64,000 nucleotides of DNA from Oculina patagonica. Its lineage: Eukaryota. The stretch covers positions 15,376,001 through 15,440,000 of the forward strand of contig NC_135769.1 of NCBI RefSeq assembly GCF_052425735.1, in the 5' to 3' direction. How positions within the stretch are numbered: the stretch's first letter is position 1; every line of letters starts with the position of its first letter. Below are positions 434 to 50,656 of the stretch, one piece after another. The notes beneath the pieces were generated by a model. That model was not told where the DNA came from, ran no database searches, and saw nothing but the letters and a program-made list of their open reading frames with translations. The position numbers were made by a program, and so were the translations under genes.

Positions 434-1345
434 TTAACAACACGTAATCTGTCTCACAGTGCCTATGACCGCCCGTCTCACTTCTTGAATCTTCCAACAA
501 TAAAGGATTGGGTTGAGGGTTGAGTTAATGAACACCAGCGTTAATGACAACATCCAAGCCAGCATAAGAGATGGCGTCATTTCCCATCCAAACATCAGTA
601 ACCCAGTAACAATACCAACTGGAAGGTAACACGTGACTAGTGTAAGCTGTACCCACAATGCACTGGACACTGTCTTTCTGTATCGCGCTATGTTCAATGG
701 CTCATGTCCGCTTGGTTGTCCTTGGTGAACGTGTTCTTGTATTTGAGCTTGATGATGAAGGAGCTTTAGATAGATCTCTATGTAACAGCCGATTGATACC
801 GTCACGCATAATAAAATAGATGCAAAGCAATAATATGAAATAAATGTTATTTTCCAAAACGCCGCCGTTGCACAGCAAACGTTCAGAGTCCAAAAACAAA
901 TGACAGCCACAAGAACTCGTTTAAAAGTAACCACTTGTCTGTATCTCATGCCCAGTGACAGGGCGAGAAGTCTGTCCACGCTTATTGCGGTCAGTGTAAA
1001 CAGAGATAGAAAACTAAAAAGTACATCTATAACAACAGTTATGTTAAAATACTGGAAACAAAGATTACAGTTTTCGTATTCTTTAATCAACAAAAATATG
1101 ACAAAAAGCGGCTCCAAGAGAATCCCAACGCAGAGATCAGTGAGCGCCAGTGAACGTAACAAGATCTTGGAAGGTGGACGAAGGGACGACTCCTTGTGGA
1201 GGGCAGCTAGGATCAAAGTATTACCTAGGGTTGTAGTGATGGCAAGAAAGATATTAGAGATCACAAGAAACCACAATGTATGCGGGGCTCCTGTTAAAGG
1301 TACAAAACAGATAAACCGAACAATTTCCTCATCAACGCGAGCCAT
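434..1345 (-). CDS. Intronless class A (rhodopsin-like) GPCR of the cnidarian-expanded melanocortin/adenosine-receptor-like group, 303 aa
   Basis: Seven hydrophobic segments; GN in TM1, LALTD in TM2, SVDRLL (DRY variant), CYLP in TM6, NSTLNPILY (NPxxY), C-terminal CC. ATG start, no disruptions. Confidence 0.92.
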   Translation of the reverse strand: MARVDEEIVRFICFVPLTGAPHTLWFLVISNIFLAITTTLGNTLILAALHKESSLRPPSKILLRSLALTDLCVGILLEPLFVIFLLIKEYENCNLCFQYFNITVVIDVLFSFLSLFTLTAISVDRLLALSLGMRYRQVVTFKRVLVAVICFWTLNVCCATAAFWKITFISYYCFASILLCVTVSIGCYIEIYLKLLHHQAQIQEHVHQGQPSGHEPLNIARYRKTVSSALWVQLTLVTCYLPVGIVTGLLMFGWEMTPSLMLAWMLSLTLVFINSTLNPILYCWKIQEVRRAVIGTVRQITCC

Positions 1346-2734
1346 GTTGAGTGCTTTTTATGGAAGTCAATAGTCATCCCAAGCTGTTTACAATTTTAAG
1401 ATTGTTGACGGTCAGGATAAGAAGACGTTTGTAGCATGCGGCTTAAAGCAATCGCCAAATTTAAGGGATCACCATCATCAGAGGATGACGAGAAGGATAA
1501 AGTTGTTTGTCCGCAGTCCATTTCATTTATTCTGTGTGCCTGTTACCTTATTATTTATTCATTAAACCTAAATTTAAATATAAAGTCCAACGCCTTACTT
1601 TCTTTGTTATGCAATTTCTACTATTTTTTTAAAGATGGCACGGGATGTTTTCATTGTGTGTGCTAAAGTAAATATAACTACCGAAGGAAAAACCAGCTGA
1701 AAGTTAAAGGATTTTTATCATTGAGTTTTGCCAGCTTCTGAGATCACGTAATAAGTTTCCAGGTCATGTGGACAATATAAATGAAGGCTGCTGCTGAGTG
1801 TAGTTTATTTGCTCATCAGTATGGGCAGCAGATTTTTTATTAGATATAACATCAACAAAGCAAATCCTTTTTATCCCTTTCGTTCTTTTGTCATAAGATT
1901 TTTCATATTCTAATTAAACGTTACCCCCTTGTTCTAATATATTTAATTGACATGAGAAAACGAGAAACGTTAAAATGTATTTTTGCACCTTTCATTAAAT
2001 AATAATGAGTTTAATGAATTTAGGAAACTGACAAAGTAAATTTAGAGTCAGCAGGATACAACAAAACTGGGAGCACTGACAACAGTTTTGCCGACCAAGT
2101 GACAAAAATAACAATGAAAACTGGGCTAGCGGCATATTAAAAGCCAGTCTTTTAATTTTCAATTTTTTTTACTTTTAAAACGAACGAAATAAATTAAAGA
2201 TGCTCTTTACCCATTTACATTTGAATCAAATCTCATCTAATTCTAGTAGTAAGTAAATCAAATAGGTACATTTAAATTACAATAATTTCGTTTGCTCCAG
2301 TGATAAACAAAGCAATAGAAATCGATCTTGTGACATAAAAAAAGCCAGTCTTTCAATTTCATAACTTTTGGTATGACAAAAATATGCTTCATAGCACAGG
2401 CGGATGTAATCAAAATATTTAGCGGACGCTACTGCAAGCTGCTTCACACTACTAAAGCTCTTATTTTCTTCAATACTGATTAATACCGACAGAAGTCCAT
2501 AATTCATGTACTTCTGATGCCGAGTAAGAATTGAACATTTCCAGTCACTTGGCTAGTTTTTGCCATCTTGTTCTGCAAAACCAGCTCAGTTTTTTTTTGC
2601 CTTAACATCGTGAACCGCCGGTCAAAGTGATTGCTTCAACACGTTCACAGTCACAGCTGAAGCCGAGCTGCATATTATTCAGAACGACTGCTCAGGGCCA
2701 TGTAACAGTCATGTAACCAATATACACATCAAAC

Positions 2735-3658
2735 ATGGAAGCCGATCGTGAAGAAGTGGCGGATGGATTTTGCATTTCACTTCGATTGATAGGGAGCTAT
2801 GAAATGAGATTTCTTGTGGCCGGTTTGAATATTTTTCTTGCTATCTGTGCAACTTTAGCAAATACTGTGATCCTAGCTGCCCTTCACAAGGAGTCGTCCC
2901 TTCATCCACCGTCCAAGATCTTGTTACGTTCACTGGCGCTCACTGATTTCTTTGCTGGAATTCTCGTGGAGCCACTTTTTGTCACAGTCTTAATCACGGT
3001 GGACGAAAACCAGAATCTTTGTTATCAAATTATTATCTTTACTCTGTTTACCGCACAAGTATTGTGTCTATTATCTTTGCTAACACTGACCGCAATAAGC
3101 GTGGACAGACTTCTCGCCCTGTTACTGGGCATGAGATACAGACAAGTGGTTACTTTTAAACGAGTTCTTTTGTGTGTGATCTGTTTTTGGACTCTAAGCA
3201 CTGGCTTTGCCACAGCGGTTTTTTGGGTTGATTACAGTAAGGCAAATTTATATCTTTTCTTCATAGTTGATTTGTTATGTATAACGATTTCAACTTGTTG
3301 TTATATCAAAATCTGTCAAAAGCTCCTTCATCATCAAGCTCAAATACACGTTCACCAAGGACAACCAAACGGACATGAGCCATTGAACATAGCGCGATAC
3401 AGAAAGACAGTGTCCAGTGCATTGTGGGTACAGTTTACAGTACTTGCATGCTATCTTCCAACAGGTATAGTTGCAGCATGGATGGCTGTGAGTGGAATAC
3501 TTGTAAATCAATCTCTTTTTGTCGCTTGGCTATTTTTATCAACGCTTATGTTCTTTAACTCAACACTGAACCCAATCCTATATTGTTGGAAGATCAGAGA
3601 AGTAAGACGAGCGGTTATAGACATTAGAAGACTGATATTGTGTTGTTTTATAGGTTAG
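2735..3658 (+). CDS. Intronless class A GPCR paralog, 307 aa
   Basis: Same motif set (LALTD, SVDRLL, CYLP, NSTLNPILY); intact ORF with AAACATGG start; head-to-head with 434-1345. Confidence 0.92.
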   Translation: MEADREEVADGFCISLRLIGSYEMRFLVAGLNIFLAICATLANTVILAALHKESSLHPPSKILLRSLALTDFFAGILVEPLFVTVLITVDENQNLCYQIIIFTLFTAQVLCLLSLLTLTAISVDRLLALLLGMRYRQVVTFKRVLLCVICFWTLSTGFATAVFWVDYSKANLYLFFIVDLLCITISTCCYIKICQKLLHHQAQIHVHQGQPNGHEPLNIARYRKTVSSALWVQFTVLACYLPTGIVAAWMAVSGILVNQSLFVAWLFLSTLMFFNSTLNPILYCWKIREVRRAVIDIRRLILCCFIG

Positions 3659-9488: not shown

Positions 9489-9542
<54 letters not shown>

Positions 9543-19500: not shown

Positions 19501-22500
19501 AAATCACACTGAATTTTGTCAAATTGTGCCGTACGTGACATAGTTCCTTCAATATCCCATCTGTTTCTACATCTTGTTTCTGTTGCTGTCAGAATTAAGG
19601 TGAATGACACCTTTTTGGTAGGAACAAACACTTCACGAGTTGAAAGGACTACAGGACAAGACGTCAATTCAGTTCAAAGGCAACAAGAGATATTAAACAA
19701 TAAAAGTGAAATACATATGATTCAGCTCCAATTCTGCATTGAGAAAAAGATAAAAGATAAGATTCTCCTGTCATTCTAAATTTGAGTTATATAACAAACG
19801 TGAGTACAGTAGATTCCCGATTTTTCAAACCCTCATTTTCTCGAGCCTCTCAATAACTTGAAGTCGTTTCCCGTCGATTTGCTTCATTATTAAAGTCAAA
19901 CATTGCAGTTCTACTCCCATTTCTCGGCCGAGTTTTCGAACCAATTTCCAGTTTCCTTGAAAGTTCGAGAAATCGGAATCCCACTGTAAGTTAAAACATG
20001 TATATGCATGCACTTCAGTGTCTACAAATTATTTTTAAACCCTATGAAATCAAAAGGAAATGATATTTTTTAGCATAAAAAGAGTTTAGTTAACTGAACA
20101 AAATTTGCAAATTGAGAAACGGTACGTTTTCGCGGTTTCTAAAAGCTGGTTTTCATATGATCAAAAATTAGTTAGGGAGCTCCCAGCGGCCCGGGGCGGG
20201 GGGCCCCCATAAATGGGGGGGATATAAGACACACGGACTACTTTAAGAAAAAACAAGAAATGGTCCCAAAAAATAACTGCACGGTTGATGGAAACTTAAA
20301 TAAACGCTGTTTCGGAAGGACTGGAAAAACAGCACCTTTTTTAGCAGTAATCCAAAGAGCTGTCTTTTATCGGGTAACTGCAAATAAATAACTGGTAATA
20401 CTTATTATTTATAAGCTGCAAGTTTTTGTCAACAAGTGTTTTCTCATCTTGGGAGTCCGATTGCCGAACGTTAATAGCAATGTAGAGCTGCTAAGAAAGT
20501 CCAACATGGAAACCATAGAAACATCAGTTAAGCGAAGGAAATGGCGCTGGATTGGCCACACTCTCAGAATAGAAAGTAACAATGTGGTGAGAAAAGCCTT
20601 GCACTACCACCCACAGGGGAAGAGGAAAGTTGGACGGCCATGAATAACTGTAAGCGGTCCATGCTGCAACAGTTCAAACGAATAGTCTACTCCTGGGAAA
20701 GAACCAAAACATTAGCAAAGGACCATGTGCGTTGGAGAATACTGGTGGACGCCCTGTGCTCCCACGACAGCGAAAAGGAACAATCATGACAGAAGTTCAG
20801 AACATTGAACATAACTTAAAAACAAAATAGCATAATTTCTAAATTTATTTCTCGTCTTCTTGAGTGCTGATTTTACTTCAAAGAAAGCCATTTCGGTGTT
20901 CAAAACAAGCAAAAAGTATTATGTAATGCTAACCGGGGTTTAAGTCCCTTAAACGTAGGTTAACTAACCATCCCAGTAAGAAGTTTAACCTCGAGTTTAT
21001 CTCTAACCCTCATTGGAACAACCGGGACCAGGAAACCATTTATAACTTTTAACTTATTATACTTTAATGTTATTATTTTAACCTTTACAGCGGAGAAAAT
21101 CTAGGTAGTACATTCTCGCAAGGAGATACCTGTGTAAAAACTGGTCTAACTTGAATAACTTGTTTATGATCGATAACGAATTTGCTAACAAGGAATATAA
21201 CTGTACCGTGAAGGTAAAATTCAAATTTCATACAACCCCACAATAAGTGGCTCTGATGTTTTATTCTCTATCTAAAAAGTTGAGTCAGAAGCGACCCAAG
21301 GTTGTTCCACCTGAATCAACAACTTTAAAGACACATGCATTATTTACACGATTTAGGGGCGTATAAATATACGCACATTGTTGAATCATGCTTATTGTAT
21401 CATTTATTATTGTATATACTTGTAAGAAAAAGTTAACGTATGTCGAGGCGCATTTTTATTCGATTATTACTAAACGTTTATTTCTTTTGTATCCCCTTAA
21501 GATTAAAGTAGTGACTCTCTCAGCTTGTGAAACAATTTCTGCTTCATAAACAACACCATATTTGTCTTAAGGTGTTCATCGTCGAAGATCTAACTTCTCT
21601 TATCTTCCAACAATATAAGACAGGGTTGAGTGTTGAGTTAAAGAAAACAAGTGTTGATGAAAGTGTCCATGCGAAAAAAACAGACGAAGTCAATCCTTCT
21701 ACAGCTATTGAAACTGAAGTTAAAACCATGGGAAGATAGCATGCAAGTACTGAAACCTGTATCCACAATGCACTGGACACTGTCTTTCTGTATCGCGCTA
21801 TGTTCAATGGCTCATGTCCGTTTGGTTGTCCTTGGTGAACGTGTTCTTGTATTTGAGCTTGATGATGAAGGAGCTTTAAGTAGATCTTAATGTAGCAGTA
21901 AGTTGAGACAATTATACATAAAAGAACAACTATCGCGACGTAACATGCTGTTATCTTCTTGTTCCAAAACACCACGGTGGCAAAGCCGATGCTCAGAATC
22001 CAAAACCAAATCACACTAAACAGAACTCTTTTAAAAGTAACCACTTGTCTGTATCTCATGCCCAGTAACAGGGCGAGAAGTCTGTCCACGCTTATTGCGG
22101 TCAGTGTGAACAACGACACGCAACATAAAACCTGGCCTGCAAAAAGGGTAAAGACAACGATCTCACGGCAAAGATTCAAGCTTTTGTTAACCACAGTCAT
22201 TAAAAAAATGACAAAGAGCGGCTCCAAGAGCATCCCAACGCAAAAATCAGTGAGCGCCAATGAACGTAACAAGATCTTGGAGGGTGGATGAAGGGACGAC
22301 TCCTTGTGAAGGGCGACTAAAATCACAGTATTACTTAGCATTGAAGTGATGCCCAGAAAAATATGAAAGGCTATGATGCAAAACCACAATGCATGGGATC
22401 CAATTAATAAACGTGCAGTACAAAAAGGTTCATCTTGCGCATCATGATAATCAGCTTCCATCAGTGCCTGTCAGTGTGGGTATTGAACGTGTTTGGTGCA

Positions 22501-24036: not shown

Positions 24037-24080
<44 letters not shown>

Positions 24081-27000: not shown

Positions 27001-30000
27001 CTGGTAAAGAATTGGATTTCTTTGTGCGTAATCTTTAAGCCATCCCCTTTTTTCTCTGTTTGCGCGTCACCGACCAGATTTCGCGTTTAAAAAAAAAAAA
27101 AATTATACAGAAGGAAGAAGGCATGACACTAATAATGTTTCATCCTTTACGCTGTTCTGTTTGAGTAACCACGACGCGATCCTCCCCATTGCCGCCATGT
27201 GACTGTAACCATGCCCCAGGCCCACGGACATAGCGAGGACCGGGCCTCCTAGTTCCAGACTCCCCTTTTTTTTTGTTTTTTTTTTATCCGACCGACCGAC
27301 CCAAAATCAGAAAACACATACGACGATAAACGAAAAAAAAAAAGGGGATGGCCTAAGAGGAACCCACGCATTTTGGATGCTTGTGATCTTTAATATTATT
27401 CACGCCATTACCTCAACTTCCGGCAATGCTCTGATCCTAGCTGCCCTTTACAAAGAGTCGTCCCTTCATCCACCCTCTAAGATCTTGTTGCGTTCCCTGG
27501 CAGTTACTGATTTGTGCGTGGGGATTCTCTTGGAGCGGCTCTTTGTCGCAAAATTGTTACAAATGCTTAACTTAAAAATGTATACAGTCAACTCTCTCTA
27601 AGACGGACACCTTCGGGACCGGCCGCAGCTGTCCGTCTTAGAGAGGTGTCCGCTCTGTAGAAAGTCGAGGTAACATGACACCAGTAATTCTGAGATAATA
27701 AAAGCTAAACCTTTGCACAATGTAACAAACCTTTGCTAACTGCAACAAGACTAAAATAATAAAAGGACCGTATTTGCTTTTTAGAGCAAGAATTGAGAGC
27801 TTCTACTAACTGTTATACTGTAAGAAGAGAACGACCTCTTAAGTGTCCATATACGTAAGCAAAGAAGTAATCCGTTAAAGCGTCATTGATTGTGGTTAGA
27901 AAGCTTGGTACTTGATACACGTATCCTTAGGGCACTGACTAACTTTGCGAAGATGGAAAGTATTTTCACTAATACAACATGATAAAAAAACACTTCTCAA
28001 GTGTCCGTTAATGATTTCAAAGTGTCCGTTGTCCGTCTTAGAGAGGTGTCCGTTTTATAAGGAGTTTGATAACAGTATAATGGCTGAAAAACGGCAGGGA
28101 CCATCACCAAGTGTCCGTCTTATGGAGGTGTCCGTCTTATAGAGGTGTCCGTTAAGAGAGAGTTGACTGTAAATACAAAAACAGCCGGAAAGGACAGGAG
28201 ACAGAAACCAAAACCTAGCTGGTGAATCTGCTGATACTTAAATATTTAGACCAAGGCTAAAATATTTTGCCTGCTAAATCATTGTTATAGTTAATGTAAA
28301 TAGGAATTTGCGAAAACAGTATTGCTTAGCTGTTGCAATTAAGCATTGTCAGGTTGAATGGCACATTGTTATGGTTATCTGTGAAAAGAGATTGTTGTAA
28401 ACATAAATTATGTAGAACAAAACAACGAACATAGACATATAAGACTCACCAACATATGATAGTTTTATTTCGCACCTTCAGTAAGCTTTAATATTAAAAT
28501 AATTTTTTTATCAGGTAAAATTATCTGAATTATTTGACCGCACACAGTCACAACGAAACGAATGTTGAGATGAATATTGCGACAATTTATTTCGTCTAAG
28601 CCGTTAACAATGAATGAAGAGTGCAGAGCAAAAACTTACTTAAATCCCTATCGTACGTGACCTCGCATAAAGACTATACACAATAAAACTGACTGACATT
28701 CAATTTTAAATTTAGTGATGGAATTAAAAGAAAAGTATATATTTATTTATAATATAATATAAAGTCGTTGTATAAATTAAAACTGTGACGCTTTTCTGTG
28801 GTAAAAAACAACACAGTAGTAATTCAGTTACAATATAAATTTACTTATGACAACAAAGGGACAGCAGGAAATAAGAGTAAAAATCAAGCTCACACCACTT
28901 AATTAAAAATAAAAACAAAAAATCTAATAAACCTGGTTGTTCACATCAAGCAAATAATATAAATATAACTCCATTTTATCACTGACAAATATAATGCATC
29001 CGCTCTAAGCCAATAAGAGTTAAGCAATTGACCGTTTTATGATGAGCCCCATAATTATAACTTGGTTGGCATTGAATGATAACATCTGCCATGCAGTCCT
29101 TTCAAAAAATATAATACAGATTGCATCGTGACTAAAACTTTTAATTTCAGATCCTATTGGAAATTTTAAATTAATACAATTACCGACACACAAACACGTC
29201 AATATGATGACATTAAATGAATTTCAAACAAGCTGATGTTTTTAGACATGCGCAGTTTCTAGCTACCTTGCCAAGGGTATAAATATTGGAGACATTTGAA
29301 GTCGCATCTCAAATATAAACATCCCCAATCAGTGCATGAAGCTGCCACAGGATATCATCCGCGGAGACTGTTTAGCAGTGAAATAGGGTTTACAATACTG
29401 AACATGGAAGATACTGAGCAAGCTGGAAGCCGACGTACACAAAATTATTGTACGGCACCTTTAAAAGGAACCAGTGCATTATGGTTTCTTGTAGCCTCGA
29501 ATGTTTTTCTCACAATCACGTCAACGTTAGGTAATACTGTTATCCTAGCTGCCCTTCACAAGGAGTCGTCCCTTCATTCACCTTCAAAGATCTTGTTACG
29601 TTCACTGGCGCTCACTGATTTCTTGGTTGGCATTCTCACGGAGCCATTTTTTATCATATTTTTCATGACAATCGAACATGAGAACTTGAATCTTTGCTAT
29701 GACCTTATAACTGCCGGTATTTTTGTAGGTTTACTGTTGTGTTCGGTATCTTTGCTCACACTGACAGCAATAAGCGTGGACAGACTTCTCGCCCTGTTAC
29801 TGGGCATGAGATACAGAGAAGTGGTTACTTCTAAACGAGTGCTGATGATTGTGATATGTTTTTGGATTTTGAGTATTGGCCTTATTACCTCAGGTTTATG
29901 GATCGGTGATATCACTTTTTATTATATCTCCTTATCTGTTCCATTATGCCTAGTAGTCTCAACCTGCTGTTATACAAAGATTTACCTAAAGCTCCTTCAT

Positions 30001-33000
30001 CATCAAGCTCAAATACACGTTCACCAAGGACAACCAAACGGACATGAGCCATTGAACATAGCGCGATACAGAAAGACAGTGTCCAGTGCATTGTGGGTAC
30101 AGTTTTCAGTACCTGTATGCTACCTTCCAACTGGTATAGTTACAGGTTTGATGGCGACCAGAGGAATGCTTCCATCTCTTATTGTCGCTTGGATGTTTTC
30201 ATCAACGCTAACATTGTTTAACTCAACACTAAACCCGATGCTATATTGTTGGAAAATTAAGGAAGTAAGACGAGCGGCCATTAACACAATTAAACAGCTA
30301 ACTTGTTGTGGATCAAGTTAAACGAACCTAAATCCACAGAATCTAAAGTACTAGTTTGACATAAGCGGCGGAGCAGGGGGAGCAGGGTCGCTGTAGCCCC
30401 CCCCCCCCAAAAAAAAAAAAACGTTGTTAGCGAAGCATAAAATTGGTTTATCAAGATATTCAGTCTAGTGATTTTTTCACAAATCGTTTCATTATATTAG
30501 GATCGTGCTTGGCGAAATAATATGGTGAAGGACTATCAAAGAAACTCCTCTCCCAGAAACGCTACTAAGAGAGGTCCAACAGCTGGTAGAATTGTATTTG
30601 ACATTGCCTGTGGCATCGGCGATGGAGCAGAAAACAAAATTCTGTTACTAATTACGATATAAATTGTCTTTTTACGCCATAATTAAAAAAATACGTAAAA
30701 AGCAGGTAATACGAATAAAAAACAAGCTGACACAACTTATTGCGGTTTTCAGTGAAATGCGAACTTTGAATTTTAAATTCCAAAAAACGTTTGGTTTTTC
30801 CCCCCCGTCATTTATATTTTTGGGGAAAACAAAGGAACAAAAAAAAAAAAAAAAAAAAAAAATGGATAAAAATTTTACAAATCAAATGGAGAAATTTTTT
30901 TTCCCCGTAAAACTCTCCCCCGGGGGGCTCCTATAATTTTACAGCAAAAAAAAAAAAATTTTTTTTTTTTTTATTTTTTAAAAAAATAATTTAAAAAGAA
31001 AGAAACCCTAATACCTGTTTATTTTTCTTTCAAGCAAACAAAATTCATTCATTTCACATTTACAAAGAATTTCAAGCTAACAGGAAATAAATGTCAGTTA
31101 GATAAAAAGACTCGTCAAACACTCCATAAACTCATCAGTACTGAATACACTCCAAAGGGAAATATTAATTAATGACCAGTATGCCAATGTTTTTTTACGG
31201 AGTGTTACAAGCACCACAGCTTAGGTAATTGGTTTTGATTACATTGTTTAGCGCCATGGCAAAGTTGATTGGACCGTTCAGTAAACTTATTATAAACAAA
31301 TAAGAATCAAAGTCACTCGACGCTGCTTTAACAGCGTGTTTCGTTTGTGGTTCGAGGGAAGAGGGTCCTGAAGGGAGGGTACCAAATCCCATTTCCCAGC
31401 CCAAGTTTTGCCCAAATCCCATTTCCCAGCCTATTTTTTGTCTAAATCCCAGTCCCAGCAGTGAAATTCCCAGTGCGTGGAAAATCTGGTCTCAAGTGCA
31501 TTATATCTGTGTTGTTTTGATTGTCCTAAACGTAGCCTACTCTCTGAACTTTCCCTTCGGTGCCCAATATAGGGATTGAACCCAGGCGCAGGAAGAGCGA
31601 GTCCAGAATAACTTGTATGCGCATGCTTAGAAATCCGTCGCCCCCCACCCCCCCACCTTACAAAAAAGGGGGGTGACCACCCGGGGGTGACCAAACCATA
31701 TTCCACAGCACCTTTGGACACGCACGCGCGCAGACGATAAATTAAAAAAGTTGTAATTGTGGATTTAGTACCTATTTTGCATAGTTCAGTTTTTCATTTA
31801 AGCGAGCTATTTTTACCTTAGCGCACACACGCTACATGTAAGAAATGCCACACCTCTCTGTCGTTTTTCATTGGTTTGTTTTTAAAAGCATGCACATGCA
31901 AGTTATCCTGGACTTTCTTTTCGCACCTGGGTCGCAGAAGGGATAGTTTAACGACTTGACTAATACGACTATCCAAAATCATGCTCTGCTAGTTATCATC
32001 ACTAATATTGTTGAGAATATCACTTTTCATTTGTTCGTTTGTCTTGTAGAGAATAATAGAATTTTTTGAAGCTTTAACTAAAGCTATCAAGTTTTTATCC
32101 CGTACCTACCACTACCCTGACTGACAACAACTTGCTGTCACTTCTTTTAAATATTCCATTTGTGCTGATCCTCAGTCATAGCTGTTCCGTTGAGTAACTT
32201 AATCACTTACACGAAAATTGATCAAGACTTCATGGACACTCGTGCAGTGCGGTCGTTTCGTTTCAGAATTTTCAGCGTCAGTTTGAACTATTTTTTGCCG
32301 GACTTTAAGAACATAACATTATATAAGGTAGCGCAAAATATGCAGGTTTAGTCATGTACTGATGCGCTTCCCATTCCCATTTTTTGTTTCCGAATCCCAG
32401 TCCCAGTGACCTAAATCCCATTTTCCCAGTGAAAAAATAGGCAAATCCCAGTTCCCATTTTACCCCTTCAGGACCCTCAGGGAATAGAAGTGTGTTCATG
32501 GAAATGTTATAAAGAAACCTTATGAAAATATCGCTGAACAAATCATACACTGAACATGATTTCTCGGCCCTGAGCATGCTCCCGGCCCCCAATCCGGTCC
32601 CCCCCAATCCGGCCCCCAATCCGGCCCCCAATCCTAAACACAATCTAAGTCCAGTAACCTGAAATTTTTTTTAGATAATCTCATAATACAATGGAATTCC
32701 GATTTCTAGCATCCTCGTTTTCCCGAACCGACCGAAAACTCGAACCAAAAGTCTTTTCCTTGGATTTGTTTCACTCAGTCGAACACCGCAGTTTTAACTC
32801 GATTCTCGAACCAATTTTTGTCTCCAAGAAGGTTCGAGATATCGAGATTCCACTGTAGTTTCTGCCTTTTCACAACTAAAATAGCAGCGGCAATGGACTT
32901 TTAACGCAAGGAGTTCAATGAGAAAAGTTATTTAGTGAAAATTAGTATTAGTAAATTCTATCTATCGGTTCAACTTCCCACCGGGTATATCTTGGGTGGC

Positions 33001-38963: not shown

Positions 38964-39154
38964 CCTTTTATCGGCGAAATGTATATTTATTTATGCTTAT
39001 TTCACGGAAGGGAAAAGGCGATCATACGGACACATTTTTATCTCACTTACAGCTATCAATGCTATTGTACTTTATCATTACGAAATCACTGATTTGTCCG
39101 GCCTGATATAAGCTAAAGAAGTAATCTTAACCACCTAATGGAAAAGTCGCTGGT

Positions 39155-40080
39155 TTAACTTAACAAACAACAACATATTTGTTTCAGCGTGTCTTTGGCC
39201 GCTCGTCTAACTTCTCTCATCTTCCAACAATAAAGGATTGGGTTCAGAGTTGAGTTAAAGAATACAAGTGTTGATGCAAGTATCCAGGGCTCAAGGAATG
39301 AAGAAGTGGATCCTCTGAGAGCCATTGAGATTGTAACTATAACCAAAGGAAGGTAGCAAACAAGCAACGTAAAATGTACCCACAATGCACTGGACACTGT
39401 CTTTCTGTATCGCGCTATGTTCAATGGCTCATGTCCGTTTGGTTGTCCTTGGTGAACATGTTCTTGTATTTGAGCTTGATGATGAAGCAGCTTTAGATAA
39501 ATCTTAATGTAAGAGCAAGTAGAGAACATTATACATAATAGAACAGCTATAAAGATGTAACTGATGGTTATCTTCTTGCTCCAAAACACGATGGTCGCAA
39601 AGCCGACGCTCAGAATCCAACAACAGATAACGATCAGTCGAATACGCTTATCATGAAGTAACCACTTGTCTGTATCTCATGCCCAGTAACAGGGCGAGAA
39701 GTGCCTGTCTACGCTTATTGCGGTCAACGTAAACAAGGATATCAAGCATAAAACTTGTCCTGCAAAAAGCGTAAAGACTTCGACGTCCCGGCAAAGGTTC
39801 AAGCTTTTTTTAACCACAGTCATTAAAAATGTAACAAAGAGCGGCTCCAAGAAATCCCAACAAAGAAATCAGTGAGCGCCAGTGAACGTAACAAGATCTT
39901 GGAAGGTGGATGAAGGGACGACTCCTTGTTAAGGGCGACTAAGATCATAGTGTTTCCCAAGGTTGAAGTGATGGCCAGAAAAACATTTAAGCCGACTGCA
40001 ACAAAACTCAATACTTGTGTCTGCGTTAATTGAGGTGCCATGCAGATTCCATCTGCCTCTTTCGTGTGATCTGCTTCCAT
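39155..40080 (-). pseudogene. Full-length GPCR pseudogene with frameshifts
   Basis: Homologous from MEADHT... to ...ICCCLLS but frameshifted at about 39850 (end of TM2), with small indels at about 39703 (DR motif) and about 39650. Confidence 0.88.
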
Positions 40081-40860: not shown

Positions 40861-41310
40861 ATTTCTTGTGGTGTCTCTGCCACAAGGAGTCGCCTCTTTA
40901 TCCACCTTCTAAGATCCTGTTACGTTCACTGGCGCTCACTGACTTTTGTTACGATTTTCTAATGTACAACCGCGTTTTGTCACATTTAAAAGTACGAAAG
41001 CCGGAATCTTTGTTCATGGATTTTTATCAACGATAAGTGTAGGCAGACTTCTTGCCCTTCAGTGTTACTGAGCGTGAAATACACAGACAAGTCGTTACTT
41101 TCAAACTAGTTCAAGTGATTGTGAGCTGTTTCTAAATGGATGTTGTGCATTTGTTACCACGACGGCATTTTGGACCTACGAATAACTTTCATGTTATAGC
41201 TTCATGTATATTCTGTTATGCGTATTATTAATTTCAAATTGCAGTTTCATCAAAATCTGTCGCAAAATTCTTTGTCATAAAGCTCAAATACATGATGATG
41301 GTCATCTCGT
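40861..41310 (+). pseudogene. Strongly decayed GPCR remnant
   Basis: Recognisable [23 protein letters not shown] block, degraded DRLLAL/YRQVVTFK block (41030-41110) and FIKICRKILCHKAQIHD; multiple stops and indels. Confidence 0.8.
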
Positions 41311-42061
41311 TCAGATTTCAAAGGCTGGAACAGTAAAAAGTATAATAGTAAATCAGGACAAATTATCTATTAGACATTTCTTTGGTATCGGTGCATATTT
41401 TAAGCAATCATTTGCATGGCCATAGTCATAACCAGACCTTTGCCATAGACGAGGCGAGATCTTGCTAGTGCGTTCTGGGCGCATGCCTTCAAGAAAATTT
41501 TGAAATCTAGAAGCTACGAATCTCTTTCAGAGACATTTCGTGAGAAAAAATCAATCTTGTTCAACTGGGAATTATTTTCCCAGTTGTTTTTAATCTTGGG
41601 TACAAATTTAGACGAGGCAAGTGCCTCGTCTTGCCTCTTGCTAGCAATGGCCCTTATCATTTGTGTTCTGAAGTTTTATGCCAAATACAGCAACAACAAG
41701 TAATAGGGTTTTAGAATTAAAAAGTCTTCTAAGGTTGGCAAATTAAAGTCGGGAGAGTAACAAACAAAATGATAAAGTTATAGCCAGAACAAAAGGAACA
41801 AAGTTATAAGCGGACACTACTTTTTGTGGTGTGCCTTAAGACTGTAAAAAGATTTTCGAACATAAATAAATAAAGTGAATTCAGATTTAATTCTACATTC
41901 TTACGAATCAAGCAGATAATAGACCTTTCCCGCATCAATCCATTGTCCAATGAACAATGATTTCAAGATGAGTCTAAGGCCGGGATGGAAATAACTACAG
42001 TAAAAATATGAGAATTGCGCTTAATGCGGGAAAGGTCTCACTGTTCAGCTAAGCGTGCCTA

Positions 42062-42606: not shown

Positions 42607-43518
42607 ATGGAAGCTGATGGGAGCGCCAGCCTGAATATTTGCTCGCCACTCGTAATGGGCACACATGCATTTTGGTTTACCATAGTTCTTCATATTTCTC
42701 TCGCCATTACTTCAACCTTAGGTAATACTGTGATCTTGCTTGCCCTTAACAAGGAGTCGTCCCTTCATCCACCTTCCAAGATCTTGTTACGTTCACTGGC
42801 GCTCACTGATTTCTGCGTTGGGATTATTTTGGAGCCGCTTTTTGTCGCATCTTTTATGACGAAAAAATATGAAAGCTGGAATCTTTGTTACTTCTTCCAT
42901 GCTATTACTATTTTTACCGGTCAAGTGTTGTGTTTGGTTTCTTTGCTCACACTGACCGCAATAAGCGTGGACAGACTTCTCGCCCTGTTACTGGGCATGA
43001 GATACAGACAATGGGTTACTTTTAAGCGCGTACTAGTGATTGTGATCTGTTTTTGGATTCTGGGCCTCGGCTTTGCCACTGCGGTGTTTTGGAATAAGAG
43101 GATAACCTTATATTATATCTTTGTAGTTGTTTTATTATGCGTTGTGGTCTCAACTTGCTGTTACATCAAGATTTATCAAAAGCTTCTTCGTCGTCAAGCT
43201 CAAATACAAGATCACGTTCAGCAAGGACAACCAAACGGAAATGAGCCATTGAACATATCGCGATACAGAAAGACAGTGTCCAGTGCATTGTGGATTAAGT
43301 TTTCAGTACTTGCATGTTACCTCCCTTTTGGTATAGTTACAGCTTCAATGGCAATCAGAGGAATGACCCCATCTCTTCTTGTCGCTTGGACACTTTCAGC
43401 AACGCTTATGTTCTTTAACTCAACTCTTAACCCAATCCTCTATTGTTGGAAGATCAGAGAAGTAAGACGAGCGGCGATGGAAACTATTAGACAGATGTTG
43501 TGTTGCTTATCGAGCTAG
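42607..43518 (+). CDS. Intronless class A GPCR paralog, 303 aa
   Basis: Intact ORF with all family motifs. Confidence 0.92.
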   Translation: MEADGSASLNICSPLVMGTHAFWFTIVLHISLAITSTLGNTVILLALNKESSLHPPSKILLRSLALTDFCVGIILEPLFVASFMTKKYESWNLCYFFHAITIFTGQVLCLVSLLTLTAISVDRLLALLLGMRYRQWVTFKRVLVIVICFWILGLGFATAVFWNKRITLYYIFVVVLLCVVVSTCCYIKIYQKLLRRQAQIQDHVQQGQPNGNEPLNISRYRKTVSSALWIKFSVLACYLPFGIVTASMAIRGMTPSLLVAWTLSATLMFFNSTLNPILYCWKIREVRRAAMETIRQMLCCLSS

Positions 43519-44863
43519 AGCTGGCTGATATTACTTTGTACTCTGTGTTTTAGCGCTTCCAGTCTTATAAGTATTTAAAGATTAGACTAGCACAGAAAAT
43601 GTGGGATGATCATTTTTTGGTGAGCGCAATTCGCTTTAAGCCGTGAAGGTTTAATTGAGAGGGAATTTATCAAAGCAGGCGGTGGGGCAGTGAGGGAGAG
43701 GGAAAATATCACCACACTGTTTTGCTAACGAATCAAAAATAAACGGACAATAACGTTTCAGGAATAATTAATATTTGTCTGTTTTGGACTCCGTCTTGAA
43801 GCAGTTGTCAACTGATAATTCTTCCAGGGAATAAAGAAAGTAATAAAGTTGCATGCTCTTCAAATATTTATGTTTCAGTCGTCACATTTTCTTTTCGTAA
43901 TGACAAGTCGGGGGATATAAAGTATATTTGCATTCATTTATTTTTCTAAACTCTTCAAAACTGTCACAAGTCAGTAGTAAGTAAATTTTAATTTACTACT
44001 CTCTGTGGGATAGATGAAAATAGATTGAAAACACACGGATATAATAAACAGCGGACGCAACTGCAAGCTGCTTCATTCACACGAATTTCTATAAACTATA
44101 AATAATATATTAAAAAAGCTGCTGGATAAACCAATATATAACAGGATAACGTTGTTTTCCCAAGTGAGGAACAAAACAATTCTACTAGTAGCTCGGTTCC
44201 AATATAAATTGACTTTTTTAAGAAATTGTATGAAATTTCTCGTGAGACAACAGCAGTAAGAGTGCAAATCCAGCCAAACACCGCTTCACTGCTTGATCAT
44301 CTCAAGCAAACAAGGTACATTCATTTATATTTAGAAATAATTTCAAGCTGTCAAAAAATAATTATTAAGTTAATAGCTAGGCTGTCAGTGAGAAAGAGGA
44401 GCTGTCCATGAACTCCGTTATCCACAAATACTGAATACGGCTCCATTATATAACCAACAAATATAATGCATTCTCTCAGTCAATAAGAGCTGAACAATTG
44501 TTCGTTGTATGACAAACAATGTTAATAATTTCGTTGGCATCAAAATGATAACATCCGACTGCCATCCAATCCTTTTGAAAAAACTAATAATACAGATGTA
44601 TTATCACTAAAACATTACTTTCAATTCAACTTATAATAAATTAAGACACGCACAACCAAACTCGCGGATATGATAAAATCTAGACCGACAAGCAATTACG
44701 GACTACCCTGCTCACAGAGTGGTATTGATTTTTTATTTTTTTTTCTATATTTTTCAAGGCTCATCTCTTAAACTTCCCGTAAGCCTGATTTGCCCCAGTA
44801 CCTCACGTTCCTACGCCGACAGGACGGCTGTTCAATGACAGAAAAGAGTTTTAACTGTTGAAC

Positions 44864-45783
44864 ATGGAGGATGCCCGGGGAGATGGATACGGAGATCCAC
44901 TAAGGTTGCTTTGTACGCCATCTATAAGAGGATCCCAGGCATTGTGGTTTTTTATAATATAATCTTTAATATTTTCATCGCCATCACTTCAACCTTAGGT
45001 AATTCTGTGATCCTAGCTGCCCTTCACAAGGAGTCGTCCATTCATCCACCTTCCAAGATCTTGTTGCGTTCACTGGCGCTCACTGACTTCTTGGTTGGGA
45101 TACTCGTTGAACCACTTTTTGTCATGACTTTCATGACCGCAAAATACGAAAACCTGAATCTTTGTTATCACTTTTATGACGTTGGTATTTTTATCGGCCT
45201 ATTGTTGTTTTTTGTATCCTTGTTCACACTGACTGCAATAAGCGTGGACAGACTTCTCGCCCTGTTACTGGGCATAAGATACAGACAAGTGGTTACTTGT
45301 TTACGAGTTCTGTTGAGTGTGATCTGTTTTTGGACTCTAAGCTTTTGCCTTCTCCTCTCGGGGTTTCTGAGTTACAAAGTTATTTCATATTATAGCTCAA
45401 TAGCTATTCTCTTATGCTTAATAGTCTCAACTTGCTGTTATACAAAGATCTACTTTAAGCTCCTTCATCATCAAGCTCAAATACACGTTCGCCAAGGACA
45501 ACCAAACGGACATGCGCCATTGAACATAGCGCGATACAGAAAGACAGTGTACAGTGCATTGTGGATACAGTTTTCAGTTATAGCATGTTATCTTCCAACG
45601 GGTATAGTTTCAGTTTTAATGGCAGCCAAAGGATTTCATCCATCTCTCATCGTCCCTTGGGCATATTCAACAACATTTTTGTTCTCTAACTCAACTTTGA
45701 ACCCAATCCTTTACTGTTGGAAGATAAAAGAAGTGAGACGAGCGGCCATGGACATTTTTAAACAGATAATCTGTTGTTTATAA
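44864..45783 (+). pseudogene. GPCR with a single frameshift (5-bp duplication); probable young pseudogene or null allele
   Basis: The homologous N-terminus starts at ATG 44864 (MEDARGDGYGDPLRLLCTPSIRGSQALWFFII) and hits TAA at 44960-44962 because ATAAT is duplicated (44954-44958 and 44959-44963). The 44911 ORF starts at an out-of-frame TTG. Confidence 0.82.
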
Positions 45784-46671: not shown

Positions 46672-47052
46672 ATGGAGATTGGCAAGGAGGTTATAAACTG
46701 CACGATTCAAGCGCTGCTTTGTGCGGTACCTTAAAGAGGAACCAGTGCATTATCAGAGGCGGATCCAGGGGAGGGGAAAGATCTTTCGAAAGCTCCTTCG
46801 TTCACCAAGGACAACCAAACGGACATGAGCCATTGAACATAGCGCGATATAGAAAGACAGTGTCCAGTGCATTGTGGGTACAGTTTACAGTTCTTGCTAT
46901 CTCCCTTTTGGTGTAGTTATAGCTTCATTTGCAGCCAGGGGATTTCCTCATATCTCTTATTGTCGCTTGGGCATATTCAACAACGATTATGTTCTTTAAC
47001 TCAACTTTGAACACAATCCTTTACTGTTGGAAGATGAGAGAAGTTAGACGAG
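46672..47052 (+). pseudogene. Internally deleted GPCR pseudogene
   Basis: N-terminus MEIGKEVINCTIQALLCAVP* is joined through a short insert to the ICL3-TM7 part (VHQGQPNGHEPLNIARYRKTVSSALW...NSTLNTILYCWKMREVRR); TM1-TM5 are missing. Confidence 0.88.
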
Positions 47053-47430
47053 TTTGAGAGGTACTGTCATGTGTGCTGTTTATACTGAATCACGAATGAT
47101 AAATATTAAGCTTGCATTTTTTAAAGTTAACGTTTTTTCATTTATGTCTTTATGTCCCTTAAACCCCCGCCACTTTAGTAAGAGAAATGGATTTGGATAA
47201 AAAACACCAGAAACATCAAAACATGAAAAGACTGAAAACAAATATGAATCAAAAACAGATGTCCTTCATTTGCTTCCATTTTAAGATTTGGTCAAAAACT
47301 ACGACTTTCCCTACAAAATATTTTTTAGAAAATAGATGCAGTGAGAATTTCCAGATTAAATTTTCTTTCTGTGTGTTATTCAGTTATCTAGTAGCTCTAA
47401 AATAAGTAACGAAAACATGAACACCGACTA

Positions 47431-48435: not shown

Positions 48436-49726
48436 TAATTATCGCCCAGATTAGAATTATGAAAACAAGTGTATGAGACAAATGATGAATCAAGGCAAAC
48501 ATATGATAATAAGTGTGACCGAAAACATGCAATTTCAAACGAAGCGTTGAGTTTATTAAATATATTTTAGAGTAAACCTTGTCAGTAGTATATTAAAATG
48601 TTGTTGAATAAACCAATCCACAACACGGTAAAGTTTTCTTTTGGGACACATAAAAATAATTTTATTTGTAATTCAATCACAATATGATGTTCCTTTATTG
48701 CCGCCAGACAGATTCTTTCTAGAAAATAACACAGCAGAAAATAAAAGTAAAAATCAAACTAGCATCACTTAATTAAAAAGTTAGTGAAAAAAAATCTAAT
48801 AAACCTGTTAATAAGAATTTCAAGCGGTTTCATTAATAACTTGTCAGTGGGATAGACAAACATTTCATATACTCCATAGTCCTGTCAATATAGAAAACAA
48901 CATCCGCTCCTAGCCAATCCGAGTTCGGCAATTCTGGTCGTACAATAGCTCATACAGCCCATACAGTATAGAATGGTGATATTCGAACTTCCAAGAGAAA
49001 TGAAACTTTGTTCGAAAAAAACTCGAGGTTCGAGAAATCGGGACAAAACTACAGTGCTCCACTGAGCGAGCAAATCCAAGTAAAACGACTTTTGGTTTGA
49101 GCTATTGGGAGGCTCGAGAAATCGAGATTCCACTGATTTATAATTTCACTTAATTAAAAAAAATTTGTGAAAGAAATCCAATAAACCAGTTCGTTCTTAT
49201 CAAGCAAAAAAATCAATTCATCTCGCATTTATTAGCAAACTCAAGCTGAAAGAAAATAACGGATACATCAATATCAATAACCTATCAGTGGGCTAGACAA
49301 ACACCAGCTTTCCAATACAGAATATATGTGTAACAAGCAAATATTAAAATATAATGCATCAGTTCTGAGCCAATCAGTGTTCTGCAATTATTCGTCGTAT
49401 AATAACTTATACTAATAATTTCGTTGGCAGCAAATGATAAGAACTTCTGCTGTGTTATCCTGTCCCAAAAAAGCAAAATACAAACTACACTAAAAACTCT
49501 CAATCTCGAAATATATTTTGCATTTTTAATTAAAACAACACTTACAGTACACAAAGATGTAATAACGAGCAGGTGTGTTTAGACGTACGCCGTAGTGTGG
49601 CTTCAATCTCGCCGGAAAAGATTCAAATAAGCCACATCTCGTAAACTTCATCTGATCCCCATTTCTCACAGTATAATATTTGTCTTTCCATTTTAGTATA
49701 TTTCAGGACAACTAACTGAGCTCAAA

Positions 49727-50656
49727 ATGCTTAACATTGAGACCGATATGGTGGAGGCTGGAAACCGAAGTGCGCAAGCGCTGCTTTGTGCGGTACCTTT
49801 TCAAGGAACCCTTTCATTGTGGTTTCTTGTAGTATCAAATATTGTTCTTGCCATCACTTCAACGTTGAGTAATACTGTGATCCTAGCTGCCCTTCACAAG
49901 GAGTCGTCCCTTCATCCACCTTCCAAGATCTTATTACGTTCACTGGCGCTTACTGATTTGTGCGTTGGTCTTGTCTTGGGGCCACTTTTTGTCATATTTT
50001 TAATGACGATAGAATTCGAAACTTGGAATCTTTGTACCAACATTATTGCTGTCACTGTTGTAACGGGTGACCTGTTGTCTTCGTTATCCTTATTCACACT
50101 GACTACAATAAGCGTGGACAGACTTCTCGCCTTGTTACTGGGCATGAGATACAGACAAGTGGTCACTTTTAAACGCGTTCTAGGGATTGTGCTCTGTTTT
50201 TGGACTCTGAGCATTTGTTTCACTACGACAGGCTTTTGGGACTACAGGATAAAATTACATTATAGCTCCGTGGCTGTTCTATTTTGCTTAGTAGTGTCAA
50301 CCTGCTGCTATACAAAGATCTACTTAAAACTCCTTCATCATCAAGCTCAAATACACGTTCACCAAGGACAACCAAACGGACATGAGCCATTGAACATAGC
50401 GCGATACAGAAAGACAGTGTCCAGTGCATTGTGGGTACAGTTTTCAGTTATAGCATGCTATCTTCCAGTCGGTATAGTAGTAACGCTAATGTCCATCAAG
50501 GGAATGACTCCAACTCTTCTTTTAGCTTGGGCATTTCTTGTTACTGTTGTACATTTTAACTCGACTCTGAACCCGATTCTGTATTGCTGGAAGATTAGGA
50601 AAGTGAGACGAGCGGTTACAGAGTTGGTGCAGCAGATATTTTGTTTAGCTACATAG
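49727..50656 (+). CDS. Intronless class A GPCR paralog, 309 aa (alternative start at 49748)
   Basis: Intact ORF with all family motifs (NSTLNPILY). Confidence 0.92.
   Translation: MLNIETDMVEAGNRSAQALLCAVPFQGTLSLWFLVVSNIVLAITSTLSNTVILAALHKESSLHPPSKILLRSLALTDLCVGLVLGPLFVIFLMTIEFETWNLCTNIIAVTVVTGDLLSSLSLFTLTTISVDRLLALLLGMRYRQVVTFKRVLGIVLCFWTLSICFTTTGFWDYRIKLHYSSVAVLFCLVVSTCCYTKIYLKLLHHQAQIHVHQGQPNGHEPLNIARYRKTVSSALWVQFSVIACYLPVGIVVTLMSIKGMTPTLLLAWAFLVTVVHFNSTLNPILYCWKIRKVRRAVTELVQQIFCLAT

What the first reader, a model, noticed from the sequence alone, without database searches (positions are those of the whole stretch)
434..50656. GPCR paralogs are mosaics: intracellular-loop DNA nearly invariant, ligand-facing halves highly divergent
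Seen, comparing gene 434(-) with gene 21544(-): the ICL3 block (651-768 vs 21761-21878) differs at 2 of 118 nt, the TM3-end/ICL2 block (921-1002 vs 22031-22112) at 2 of 82, and the ICL1 block at about 4 of 68. This identity includes third-codon positions, whereas the N-terminus, extracellular loops and outer TM halves differ extensively even as protein. The same blocks recur almost unchanged in all paralogs of this subfamily and in the pseudogenes at 24.8, 39.4 and 46.8 kb. Protein-level purifying selection alone does not explain synonymous identity. Inference: segmental gene conversion homogenises the G-protein-coupling face while the binding pocket diversifies, giving a constant/variable receptor repertoire (chemosensory or non-self recognition); the identical blocks could also act as recombination anchors that swap variable segments.
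Basis: partly seen in the sequence, partly recalled or inferred. Interest (0 to 1): 0.78.

Follow-up and report, generated by a model that had tools for sequence, protein, structure and literature searches.

The report
Coral receptor genes share frozen blocks
In a row of old, diverged orphan receptor genes of a stony coral, three short stretches coding for the inner (signalling) loops stay almost letter-identical, partly because neighbouring copies overwrite each other there and partly because silent letters too are conserved across coral genera, which hints at an unknown role for the DNA or RNA itself.

Summary
It holds for all copies of the array. The array has 9 genes and 5 pseudogene pieces on G000:C12, in the window plus 8 kb upstream.

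Among paralogs, synonymous divergence (pS) is about 0.00-0.13 in three blocks: ICL1, TM3-end/ICL2 and ICL3. Elsewhere it is 0.5-0.7. That includes the NPxxY/helix-8 region, which is equally conserved as protein.

Gene conversion is supported. A syntenic array in another coral supplies five ortholog pairs. Informative sites outside the blocks follow orthology (577 against 39). Inside the blocks they follow species (18 against 4), and AU tests agree. One identical 6-bp deletion sits in four non-sister genes.

Conversion alone is not enough. About 40% of block codons keep the same synonymous codon between Oculina or Orbicella and Porites or Pocillopora (0.61-0.70, against 0.30-0.43 in the rest of the same genes). 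This points to a constraint on the nucleotides themselves, of unknown cause.

Swapping of variable segments is not supported. An assembly artefact is excluded.

Regional conversion that spares ligand-binding parts is a known kind (TLR1/6, protocadherins). The cross-genus silent-site constraint is the unexpected part. Another window of this scan noted the protein-level pattern in a different array.

The parts
434..1345 (-). Intact GPCR gene (303 aa), array member
   Evidence: ORF. PF00001 95 bits. Blocks: ICL3 647-768, ICL2 915-1002, ICL1 1145-1204. Groups with an Orbicella gene outside the blocks (96/91).
2735..3658 (+). Intact GPCR gene (307 aa), array member; ICL3 block with the 6-bp deletion
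   Evidence: Blocks: ICL1 2861-2938, ICL2 3083-3165, ICL3 3319-3433. Deletion type.
21544..22461 (-). Intact GPCR gene (305 aa), reference copy
22255..22335 (-). ICL1 block of gene 21544 (TM1 inner end, ICL1, TM2 up to D2.50)
   Evidence: pS 0.13 among 7 paralogs. Species-specific shared changes.
22025..22120 (-). TM3-end/DRL/ICL2 block of gene 21544
   Evidence: pS 0.02-0.05. More than 321 candidate copies genome-wide at 85-100%. Strongest cross-genus codon identity: 0.81 vs 0.28 expected.
21755..21885 (-). TM5-end/ICL3/TM6-start block of gene 21544
   Evidence: pS 0.000-0.003. Copies at 92% or more only inside this array.
24237..25330 (-). Pseudogene; internal deletion starts inside the ICL2 block at 24944
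   Evidence: tblastn pieces. Blocks: ICL3 24742-24864, ICL2 24944-24991 (cut), ICL1 25136-25215.
27365..27559 (+). Gene fragment (TM1-ICL1-TM2) carrying the ICL1 block
   Evidence: 27443-27495, 92%.
29404..30321 (+). Intact GPCR gene (305 aa from the first ATG); ICL3 with the 6-bp deletion
   Evidence: Blocks: 29551-29610, 29756-29840, 29987-30102.
39158..40080 (-). Pseudogene; its syntenic ortholog in the other coral is intact
   Evidence: Blocks: 39375-39495, 39656-39726, 39877-39947. End branch 0.021 in the blocks against 0.14 outside. Its ICL3 type differs from its ortholog's.
42607..43518 (+). Intact GPCR gene (303 aa); most divergent ICL3 block of the window
   Evidence: Blocks: 42722-42801, 42947-43025, 43179-43295. 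Reproduced by contigs of 4 runs.
44861..45783 (+). GPCR gene, frameshifted near 44953 in this assembly; ICL3 with the 6-bp deletion
   Evidence: two DNA runs lack 5 letters there, and without them a 305-aa ORF opens. The start (44861) is counted back from the stop for that 305-aa ORF and was not read off a tool output. Blocks: 45019-45078, 45220-45298, 45448-45570.
46799..47054 (+). Gene fragment that begins in the middle of the ICL3 block
   Evidence: 46799-46883, 98%. Syntenic with an intact gene of the other coral.
49727..50656 (+). Intact GPCR gene (309 aa); ICL3 with the 6-bp deletion, which its ortholog lacks
   Evidence: Blocks: 49868-49948, 50093-50173, 50318-50440.

Best explanation
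The window holds most of a 58-kb tandem array of single-exon, orphan class-A GPCR genes of a stony coral. The window's own proteins sit on a 33.5-Mb contig, and the best named relatives are Oculina patagonica proteins.

The paralogs are old. They predate the split from another coral that keeps the array in synteny, and at least one gene pairs with an Orbicella gene.

Three short coding blocks lie on the cytoplasmic side: TM1 end-ICL1-inner TM2, TM3 end-DRL-ICL2, and TM5 end-ICL3-TM6 start. Each is 60-130 bp. Two processes keep them nearly identical.

(1) Shown: short-tract gene conversion between neighbouring copies, pseudogenes included, repeatedly overwrites the blocks. There, copies resemble their neighbours more than their orthologs. 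Tracts probably stop at the block edges because the flanks are too diverged for heteroduplex, or because converted pockets are selected against (inferred).

(2) Shown as a pattern, cause inferred: about 36 of 84 block codons keep the same synonymous codon across the family and across coral genera. Conversion cannot produce this. The nucleotides themselves seem to be under purifying selection, most plausibly as an mRNA- or DNA-level cis element shared by the family.

The outward-facing parts diverge freely, locally with pN at or above pS.
For: pS profile and the NPxxY control.

Locality: ICL3 copies at 92% or more occur only in this array, and other clusters are at 78-85%.

Synteny with L040: intergenic identity is 67-92% and five ortholog pairs are found. 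The tree of non-block columns recovers the ortholog pairs with 99-100 support.

Quartet sites (species / orthology / other): blocks 18 / 4 / 5, rest 39 / 577 / 31.

AU tests: block data reject 3 of 5 ortholog pairs (p 0.004-0.037). Rest data reject species clades (p 2.6e-44, 7e-6, 0.026).

GAG>GTG occurs in all 5 copies of the other coral, against GAG in all 12 Oculina and 2 Orbicella copies.

The 6-bp deletion is in 4 genes that are not a clade (AU p 5e-5, 4 changes). All four are on the + strand (Fisher p 0.01).

At block codons that are free in deep comparisons, same-codon fractions are 0.90 for paralogs within Oculina, 0.80 for orthologs in the blocks and 0.74 for orthologs outside. Paralogs outside the blocks give 0.65.

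Pseudogene 39.4 kb: end branch 0.021 in the blocks against 0.14 outside.

Deep constraint, observed / expected at saturation, Oculina vs Porites: ICL2 0.81/0.28, ICL3 0.66/0.33, ICL1 0.62/0.34, TM7-H8 0.37/0.38, rest 0.41/0.36. Five single-pair Fisher tests between the Oculina/Orbicella group and Porites/Pocillopora give p 2e-5 to 1.3e-3.

O-B orthologs: dS 0.15 in the blocks against 0.42-0.54 outside.

An independent array on C6 shows the same dips at ICL1 and the TM3 end.
Against: - GC3 is raised in ICL1 (0.58) and ICL2 (0.50) but not in ICL3 (0.37, rest 0.35). The usual mark of biased conversion is therefore missing from the most uniform block.
- Block informative sites are few: 11 species-supporting columns, several of which belong to one event. 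One ortholog pair is not rejected (p 0.22) and one is borderline (0.055).
- Cross-subfamily pairs within the genome show only a weak codon excess (p 0.02-0.14), so the deep constraint is uneven.
- No carrier of the constraint was found: no RNA structure, no Rfam hit, no hairpin source.
- Convergent amino-acid change could mimic part of the species-wise grouping, for example E>V.
Confidence: 0.7

Rival explanations
1. Gene conversion alone: the blocks are homogenised by conversion and silent sites in them are otherwise neutral.
For: All the conversion evidence. Near-identical ICL3 copies are confined to the array.
Against: Conversion does not lower the long-term neutral rate (population-genetic theory, my knowledge). 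Yet block codons are shared between genera of both major coral clades at 0.61-0.81, where the rest of the same genes is saturated at 0.30-0.43. Ortholog dS is 3 times lower in the blocks.
Confidence: 0.15
2. Nucleotide-level purifying selection alone: every copy simply retains the ancestral block, with no exchange between copies.
For: The main ICL3 type is almost the same in Oculina and in two genes of the other coral, with mostly private differences. Deep codon conservation.
Against: - Derived states are shared by non-sister paralogs of one species: GTG in 5 of 5 copies of the other coral, and the identical 6-bp deletion in 4 Oculina genes whose orthologs lack it.
- Block data reject orthology.
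- Pseudogenes keep fresh blocks.
- Inter-chromosomal pairs with the same outside divergence (0.62) have much lower block identity (0.55-0.74) than array neighbours (0.91-0.97).
Confidence: 0.1
3. Cassette system: the identical blocks are anchors for recombination that reshuffles the variable segments between genes and pseudogene donors.
For: Two pseudogene breakpoints lie inside blocks (46799 in ICL3, 24944 in ICL2). Pseudogene pieces are interspersed in the array.
Against: Variable segments V2, V3 and V4 give compatible trees. The one apparent switch (gene 16503 of the other coral) is not significant (AU p 0.51). In every variable window each gene is closest to its ortholog. Somatic events cannot be seen in assemblies.
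Confidence: 0.05
4. Artefact: the blocks were made uniform by assembly collapse or polishing.
For: Nothing was found in its favour. The blocks are repeats longer than a short read's k-mer.
Against: Independent contigs of 4 runs from different studies match gene 42607 across ICL2-ICL3 with 0-1 differences. The same pattern appears in assemblies of four other corals.
Confidence: 0.01

Closest known systems
Regional gene conversion between TLR1 and TLR6 (Kruithof et al. 2007, PMC2077338)
   Same: Tandem receptor paralogs in which orthologs are closer in the ligand-binding part. Paralogs are closer in a defined region that includes the signalling domain, and this recurs independently in each species.
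   Different: There it is one 900-bp tract in two genes. Here it is three separate 60-130-bp tracts in 9 or more genes plus pseudogenes, with an added cross-genus constraint on silent sites.
Regional homogenisation of clustered protocadherin variable exons (fugu: PMC1852091; Noonan et al. 2004, cited there)
   Same: A large tandem array whose constant-like parts are homogenised at synonymous sites, while the recognition domains escape and diversify.
   Different: Pcdh tracts show raised GC3 and are lineage-specific. Here GC3 is raised in two of three blocks, and the block sequence is largely shared between genera.
Chicken FFAR2 (GPR43) expansion with gene conversion (Meslin et al. 2015, PMC4453067)
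   Same: A tandem GPCR expansion with extensive conversion and positive selection near the binding groove limiting it.
   Different: The chicken copies are young (87-99% identical overall). The coral paralogs are old (pS about 0.5 outside the blocks), and conversion is confined to the cytoplasmic blocks.
Cnidarian miRNA target sites inside coding sequence (Praher et al. 2021, PMC7935066; Moran et al. 2014, PMC3975064)
   Same: A documented cnidarian cause of frozen third codon positions over about 20 nt. The family-wide invariant runs here are 9-27 nt.
   Different: No small RNA matching the blocks was found or could be searched for properly. This is a lead only.
Coral tandemly duplicated GPCR arrays (Noel et al. 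2023, PMC10236652)
   Same: The same kind of ancient, still-clustered tandem GPCR expansion. GPCRs are the most amplified family in corals.
   Different: That paper judged gene conversion 'very rare' in coral tandem duplicates from whole-gene comparisons. Here it is frequent but confined to short tracts.

Membership tests
Class A (rhodopsin-like) GPCR, Pfam PF00001 | Match to the 7tm_1 profile above the gathering score | tested here: met
   79-104 bits against a cut-off of 30.5 for all intact genes.
Class A (rhodopsin-like) GPCR, Pfam PF00001 | Signature motifs: N1.50, D2.50, D/ERY at the TM3 end, CWxP in TM6, NPxxY in TM7 | tested here: met
   Read from the alignments: GN in TM1, LALTD, DRL (a variant of DRY), CYLP (a variant of CWxP), NPILY. 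The variants are shared family-wide.
Adenosine A3 / melanocortin receptors (database names of relatives) | Close, full-length sequence relationship to the named receptors | tested here: not met
   Best solved chains are adenosine A2a at E 7e-14, mostly covering residues 14-163 only. Amine and melanocortin receptors score alike. The names are automatic, so the family is treated as orphan.
Concerted evolution by interlocus gene conversion | Within the tract, paralogs of one species are closer than orthologs; outside it the reverse holds | tested here: met
Concerted evolution by interlocus gene conversion | Derived states shared by non-sister copies | tested here: met
   The 6-bp deletion in 4 non-sister genes. 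GTG in 5 of 5 copies of the other coral.
Concerted evolution by interlocus gene conversion | Raised GC at third positions in converted tracts | tested here: inconclusive
   ICL1 0.58 and ICL2 0.50 against rest 0.35, but ICL3 0.37.
Concerted evolution by interlocus gene conversion | Conversion events seen directly (haplotypes, pedigrees, sperm typing) | not testable with these tools
   Only contigs of public runs were available.
Synonymous constraint element (overlapping nucleotide-level function in a CDS) | Synonymous rate locally below the gene's own baseline across species | tested here: met
Synonymous constraint element (overlapping nucleotide-level function in a CDS) | An identified overlapping function (RNA structure, small-RNA site, second frame, binding site) | tested here: not met
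   Fold z-scores 0.1, -0.2 and 1.1. Inter-block duplex z -0.15 to -1.3. No Rfam hit. No hairpin source. No consistent antisense ORF.
Cassette-shuffling diversity systems (var, VSG, VLR-like) | Variable segments with discordant histories between conserved anchors | tested here: not met
   Segment trees are compatible; AU p 0.51 for the only candidate.

The most novel reading that the evidence does not exclude
The three blocks are shared cis-acting nucleic-acid elements. One possibility is near-perfect target sites for small RNAs. Another is DNA elements read by a choice or silencing machinery. Through such elements, hundreds of receptor genes could be regulated together or made mutually exclusive, and gene conversion would be the means that keeps the elements intact in each array.
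Probability: 0.15. Interest if true: 0.85.

Novelty: new variant of a known kind. Interest (0 to 1): 0.58.

Why it matters
GPCRs are the most expanded gene family in reef corals, and their function is unknown. This array shows how such a repertoire can keep one signalling interface while its outer face diversifies.

It also qualifies the published view that gene conversion is very rare in coral tandem duplicates: it is common here but restricted to tracts of about 100 bp that whole-gene comparisons miss.

Trees of this family built from whole genes will be distorted by the blocks.

The conservation of silent sites across coral genera cannot be explained by protein function or by conversion. 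It gives a concrete, testable handle (three elements of about 20-27 nt) on possible family-wide regulation of coral receptors.

Tried and rejected
- **Local RNA structure in the blocks:** energies equal those of shuffles.
- **Pairing between blocks:** not better than shuffles.
- **Rfam:** no hit in the window.
- **Small-RNA hairpin source:** no perfect inverted pairs of the ICL2 or ICL3 cores within 10-40 nt anywhere in the genome. The power of this test is low, because real hairpins have mismatches.
- **Block antisense strings in the literature:** only unrelated hits. miRNA supplements of two coral papers are not held.
- **Overlapping antisense ORF:** one antisense frame is often open over ICL2, but for 63-170 codons, with varying limits and no consistent start. 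I took this as chance. The 157-aa ORF at 900-1373 is unique to one gene.
- **Segment shuffling:** not supported. My V1 partition was mostly gaps and gave no information.
- **Recent duplication with fast divergence:** rejected, because silent sites outside the blocks are near saturation even where the protein is conserved.
- **RNA evidence:** the runs labelled 'RNA?' are contigs and show only that gene 42607 and its 3' flank are present. No strand, level or splice information could be drawn, and the joints seen were paralog chimeras in DNA runs.
- **Other ORFs of the window:** Pfam gave nothing for 11.8, 13.5 and 59-61 kb.
Full report
**What is there.** The window is stony-coral DNA. Its own proteins lie on a 33.5-Mb contig, and the nearest named relatives are 'adenosine receptor A3-like [Oculina patagonica]'. 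More than 6,700 further relatives are almost all from corals. It holds a tandem array of single-exon class-A GPCR genes of about 300 aa (PF00001, 79-104 bits).

A search of the whole genome shows that the array runs from G000:C12:15,368,506 to 15,426,656, that is the window up to 50.7 kb plus three copies upstream in L033. I count nine genes: eight are intact, and one is frameshifted in this assembly. There are also five pseudogenes or fragments of the same subfamily. One 35%-identical GPCR of another subfamily sits at 17851-18786. The closest solved proteins are adenosine A2a/A3, amine and melanocortin receptors at E about 1e-13, often over TM1-TM4 only, so the family is an orphan.

**The observation.** Every copy in the window, pseudogenes included, carries the blocks at 89-100% identity.

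In a codon alignment of seven genes, sliding windows (Nei-Gojobori) give pS 0.000-0.003 over ICL3, 0.02-0.05 over the TM3 end and ICL2, and 0.13 over ICL1. Elsewhere pS is 0.4-0.7. The decisive internal control is the NPxxY/helix-8 region: it is as conserved as protein (pN 0.05) but saturated at silent sites (pS 0.69). The genes are therefore old, and the blocks are either young or constrained.

By the usual class-A landmarks, read from the alignment, the blocks cover three cytoplasmic stretches:
- the TM1 end, ICL1 and TM2 up to D2.50;
- TM3 from about 3.41 through DRL and ICL2;
- TM5 after Y5.58 through ICL3 to the TM6 start.

Helix 8 is also cytoplasmic but is not part of the pattern.

**Not an artefact.** Contigs from four independent public runs reproduce gene 42607 from ICL2 to ICL3 with 0-1 differences and end at the blocks, as expected for true repeats. 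Summed depth rises about 100-fold over ICL2. The same pattern is present in four other coral assemblies.

**Evidence for gene conversion.** Copies of the ICL3 block at 92% identity or more occur only in this array; other clusters are at 78-85%.

A 1.5-Mb contig of another, unnamed coral (ENA ERZ25067872, locus L040) is collinear with window 33-51 kb. Intergenic identity is 67-92%, which gives five ortholog pairs. Ortholog dS outside the blocks is 0.42-0.54. A tree of the non-block columns recovers the ortholog pairs with 99-100 support and pairs gene 434 with an Orbicella gene (96/91). The block tree instead groups the two Orbicella genes and most copies of the other coral by species.

Several tests agree:
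- **Quartets of two ortholog pairs.** Informative sites outside the blocks support orthology 577 times, species 39 and the third pattern 31. Inside the blocks they support species 18, orthology 4 and other 5.
- **AU tests.** Block data reject three of five ortholog pairs (p 0.004, 0.029, 0.037; the other two 0.055 and 0.22). Non-block data reject species groupings (p 2.6e-44, 7e-6, 0.026).
- **GAG>GTG in ICL1.** GTG is in all five copies of the other coral. All twelve Oculina copies and both Orbicella copies have GAG.
- **A 6-bp deletion in ICL3.** It is identical in four Oculina genes. Both deletion-bearing genes that have an ortholog in L040 find it without the deletion. The four genes are not a clade (AU p 5e-5; four changes on the tree). 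All four lie on the + strand, while none of seven minus-strand copies has the deletion (Fisher p 0.01), which suggests exchange mainly between copies of the same orientation.
- **The pseudogene at 39.4 kb.** Its ortholog is intact. It has an end branch of 0.14 outside the blocks but 0.021 inside, and an ICL3 type different from its ortholog's.
- **Comparison at equal outside divergence.** Array neighbours have block codon identity 0.91-0.97 where inter-chromosomal pairs have 0.55-0.74.

**Why conversion is not enough.** Conversion homogenises copies but does not slow the long-term neutral rate (theory, my knowledge). I compared the fraction of identical codons at identical degenerate amino acids with the value expected at saturation from the family's codon usage:

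| Oculina vs Porites | observed | expected |
|---|---|---|
| ICL2 | 0.81 | 0.28 |
| ICL3 | 0.66 | 0.33 |
| ICL1 | 0.62 | 0.34 |
| NPxxY/helix 8 | 0.37 | 0.38 |
| rest | 0.41 | 0.36 |

Five single gene pairs between the Oculina/Orbicella group and Porites or Pocillopora give 0.61-0.70 in the blocks against 0.30-0.43 in the rest (Fisher p 2e-5 to 1.3e-3). These genera span the complex/robust split, the deepest in stony corals (my knowledge).

Among pairs below 55% protein identity, 36 of 84 block codons are nearly invariant. They include six-fold Leu and Arg codons and form runs of 9-27 nt:
- around DRLLA and the first RYR in ICL2;
- around RYRKTV in ICL3;
- a shorter run in ICL1.

Neighbouring, equally conserved residues vary freely or carry subfamily-specific codons.

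At the block codons that are free in deep comparisons, the order is the one conversion predicts. Same-codon fractions are 0.90 for paralogs within Oculina, 0.80 for orthologs in the blocks and 0.74 for orthologs outside, against 0.65 for paralogs outside the blocks. Two layers therefore fit the data: a family-wide constraint on part of the block, and local conversion over the whole block. The constraint is uneven, and cross-subfamily pairs within the genome show only p 0.02-0.14.

**Generality.** The ICL2 block has more than 321 candidate copies in the genome at 85-100%. An independent, younger array on C6 shows the same dips at ICL1 and the TM3 end (pS 0.00-0.03 against 0.22 overall). It shows no dip over the first half of ICL3, and it has windows with pN above pS at the top of TM3 and around ECL3.

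**What the constraint might be.** I found no support for:
- local or inter-block RNA structure;
- a known RNA family;
- a second reading frame;
- a perfect hairpin source of small RNAs.

GC3 is raised in ICL1 and ICL2 but not in ICL3. Cnidarian miRNA sites lie in coding sequence, need near-full complementarity and are known to freeze third positions (PMC7935066). This makes shared small-RNA or protein-binding sites the most plausible lead, but it is untested.

**What is not supported.** Variable segments do not look shuffled. Segment trees agree within resolution, and the single candidate switch is not significant. In every variable window each gene is closest to its ortholog.

**Comparison with what is known.** Regional conversion that preserves the signalling part while recognition parts diverge is established for TLR1/TLR6 (PMC2077338), clustered protocadherins (PMC1852091) and a chicken GPCR expansion (PMC4453067).

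New here are the cnidarian setting, the three separate micro-tracts in old paralogs, and the silent-site conservation across genera. The finding also qualifies the statement that conversion is very rare in coral tandem duplicates (PMC10236652).

Another window of this scan described an array whose signalling side is nearly identical in all copies (s1-286789). A further one found conversion in a lectin-like array of this genome (s1-291640).

Noticed in passing
window 44861-45783, at about 44953: Gene 44911 lacks a start codon in this assembly. Contigs of two independent DNA runs have 5 fewer letters near 44953, and without them an intact 305-aa ORF opens. This is either an assembly error in a T-run or a null allele. 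Its ortholog in the other coral is a pseudogene.
   Followed up: partly
window 17851-18786 (+): An intact GPCR of another subfamily (35% identity, 311 aa) sits inside the array and lacks the three blocks.
   Followed up: no
window 46799 and 24944: Two pseudogene breakpoints fall inside blocks. The 46.8-kb fragment starts in mid-ICL3, and the 24.8-kb pseudogene has a deletion starting in mid-ICL2. This hints that rearrangements use the shared blocks.
   Followed up: partly
window 40881-41320 (+), next to pseudogene 39158-40080 (-): A weak GPCR fragment (about 40% aa identity, ICL1 block 87%) lies head-to-head with the pseudogene about 0.8 kb away. It is an inverted pair that could give double-stranded RNA if transcribed.
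   Followed up: no
P0036, P0039, P0029 (Pocillopora and Porites gene models); L042, L043: Public gene models of 425-496 aa join two neighbouring single-exon receptors. These are probably annotation fusions across tandem paralogs.
   Followed up: partly
G000:C6:36.34-36.39 Mb (L044-L047): In this independent array, windows at the top of TM3 and around TM6-ECL3 have pN above pS (0.37 vs 0.25; 0.47 vs 0.31). This is a candidate for diversifying selection on the pocket.
   Followed up: partly
window 58000-62000: A stretch with higher G+C (0.43-0.48) and strong GC and AT skew, with minus-strand ORFs of 163-185 aa that match no Pfam family. Its nature is unknown.
   Followed up: partly
window 43320, 43428, 43741: Single-letter differences from the assembly are shared by several independent runs; 43320 C>T is seen in all four. 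All lie outside the blocks, and they are too few for a test.
   Followed up: no
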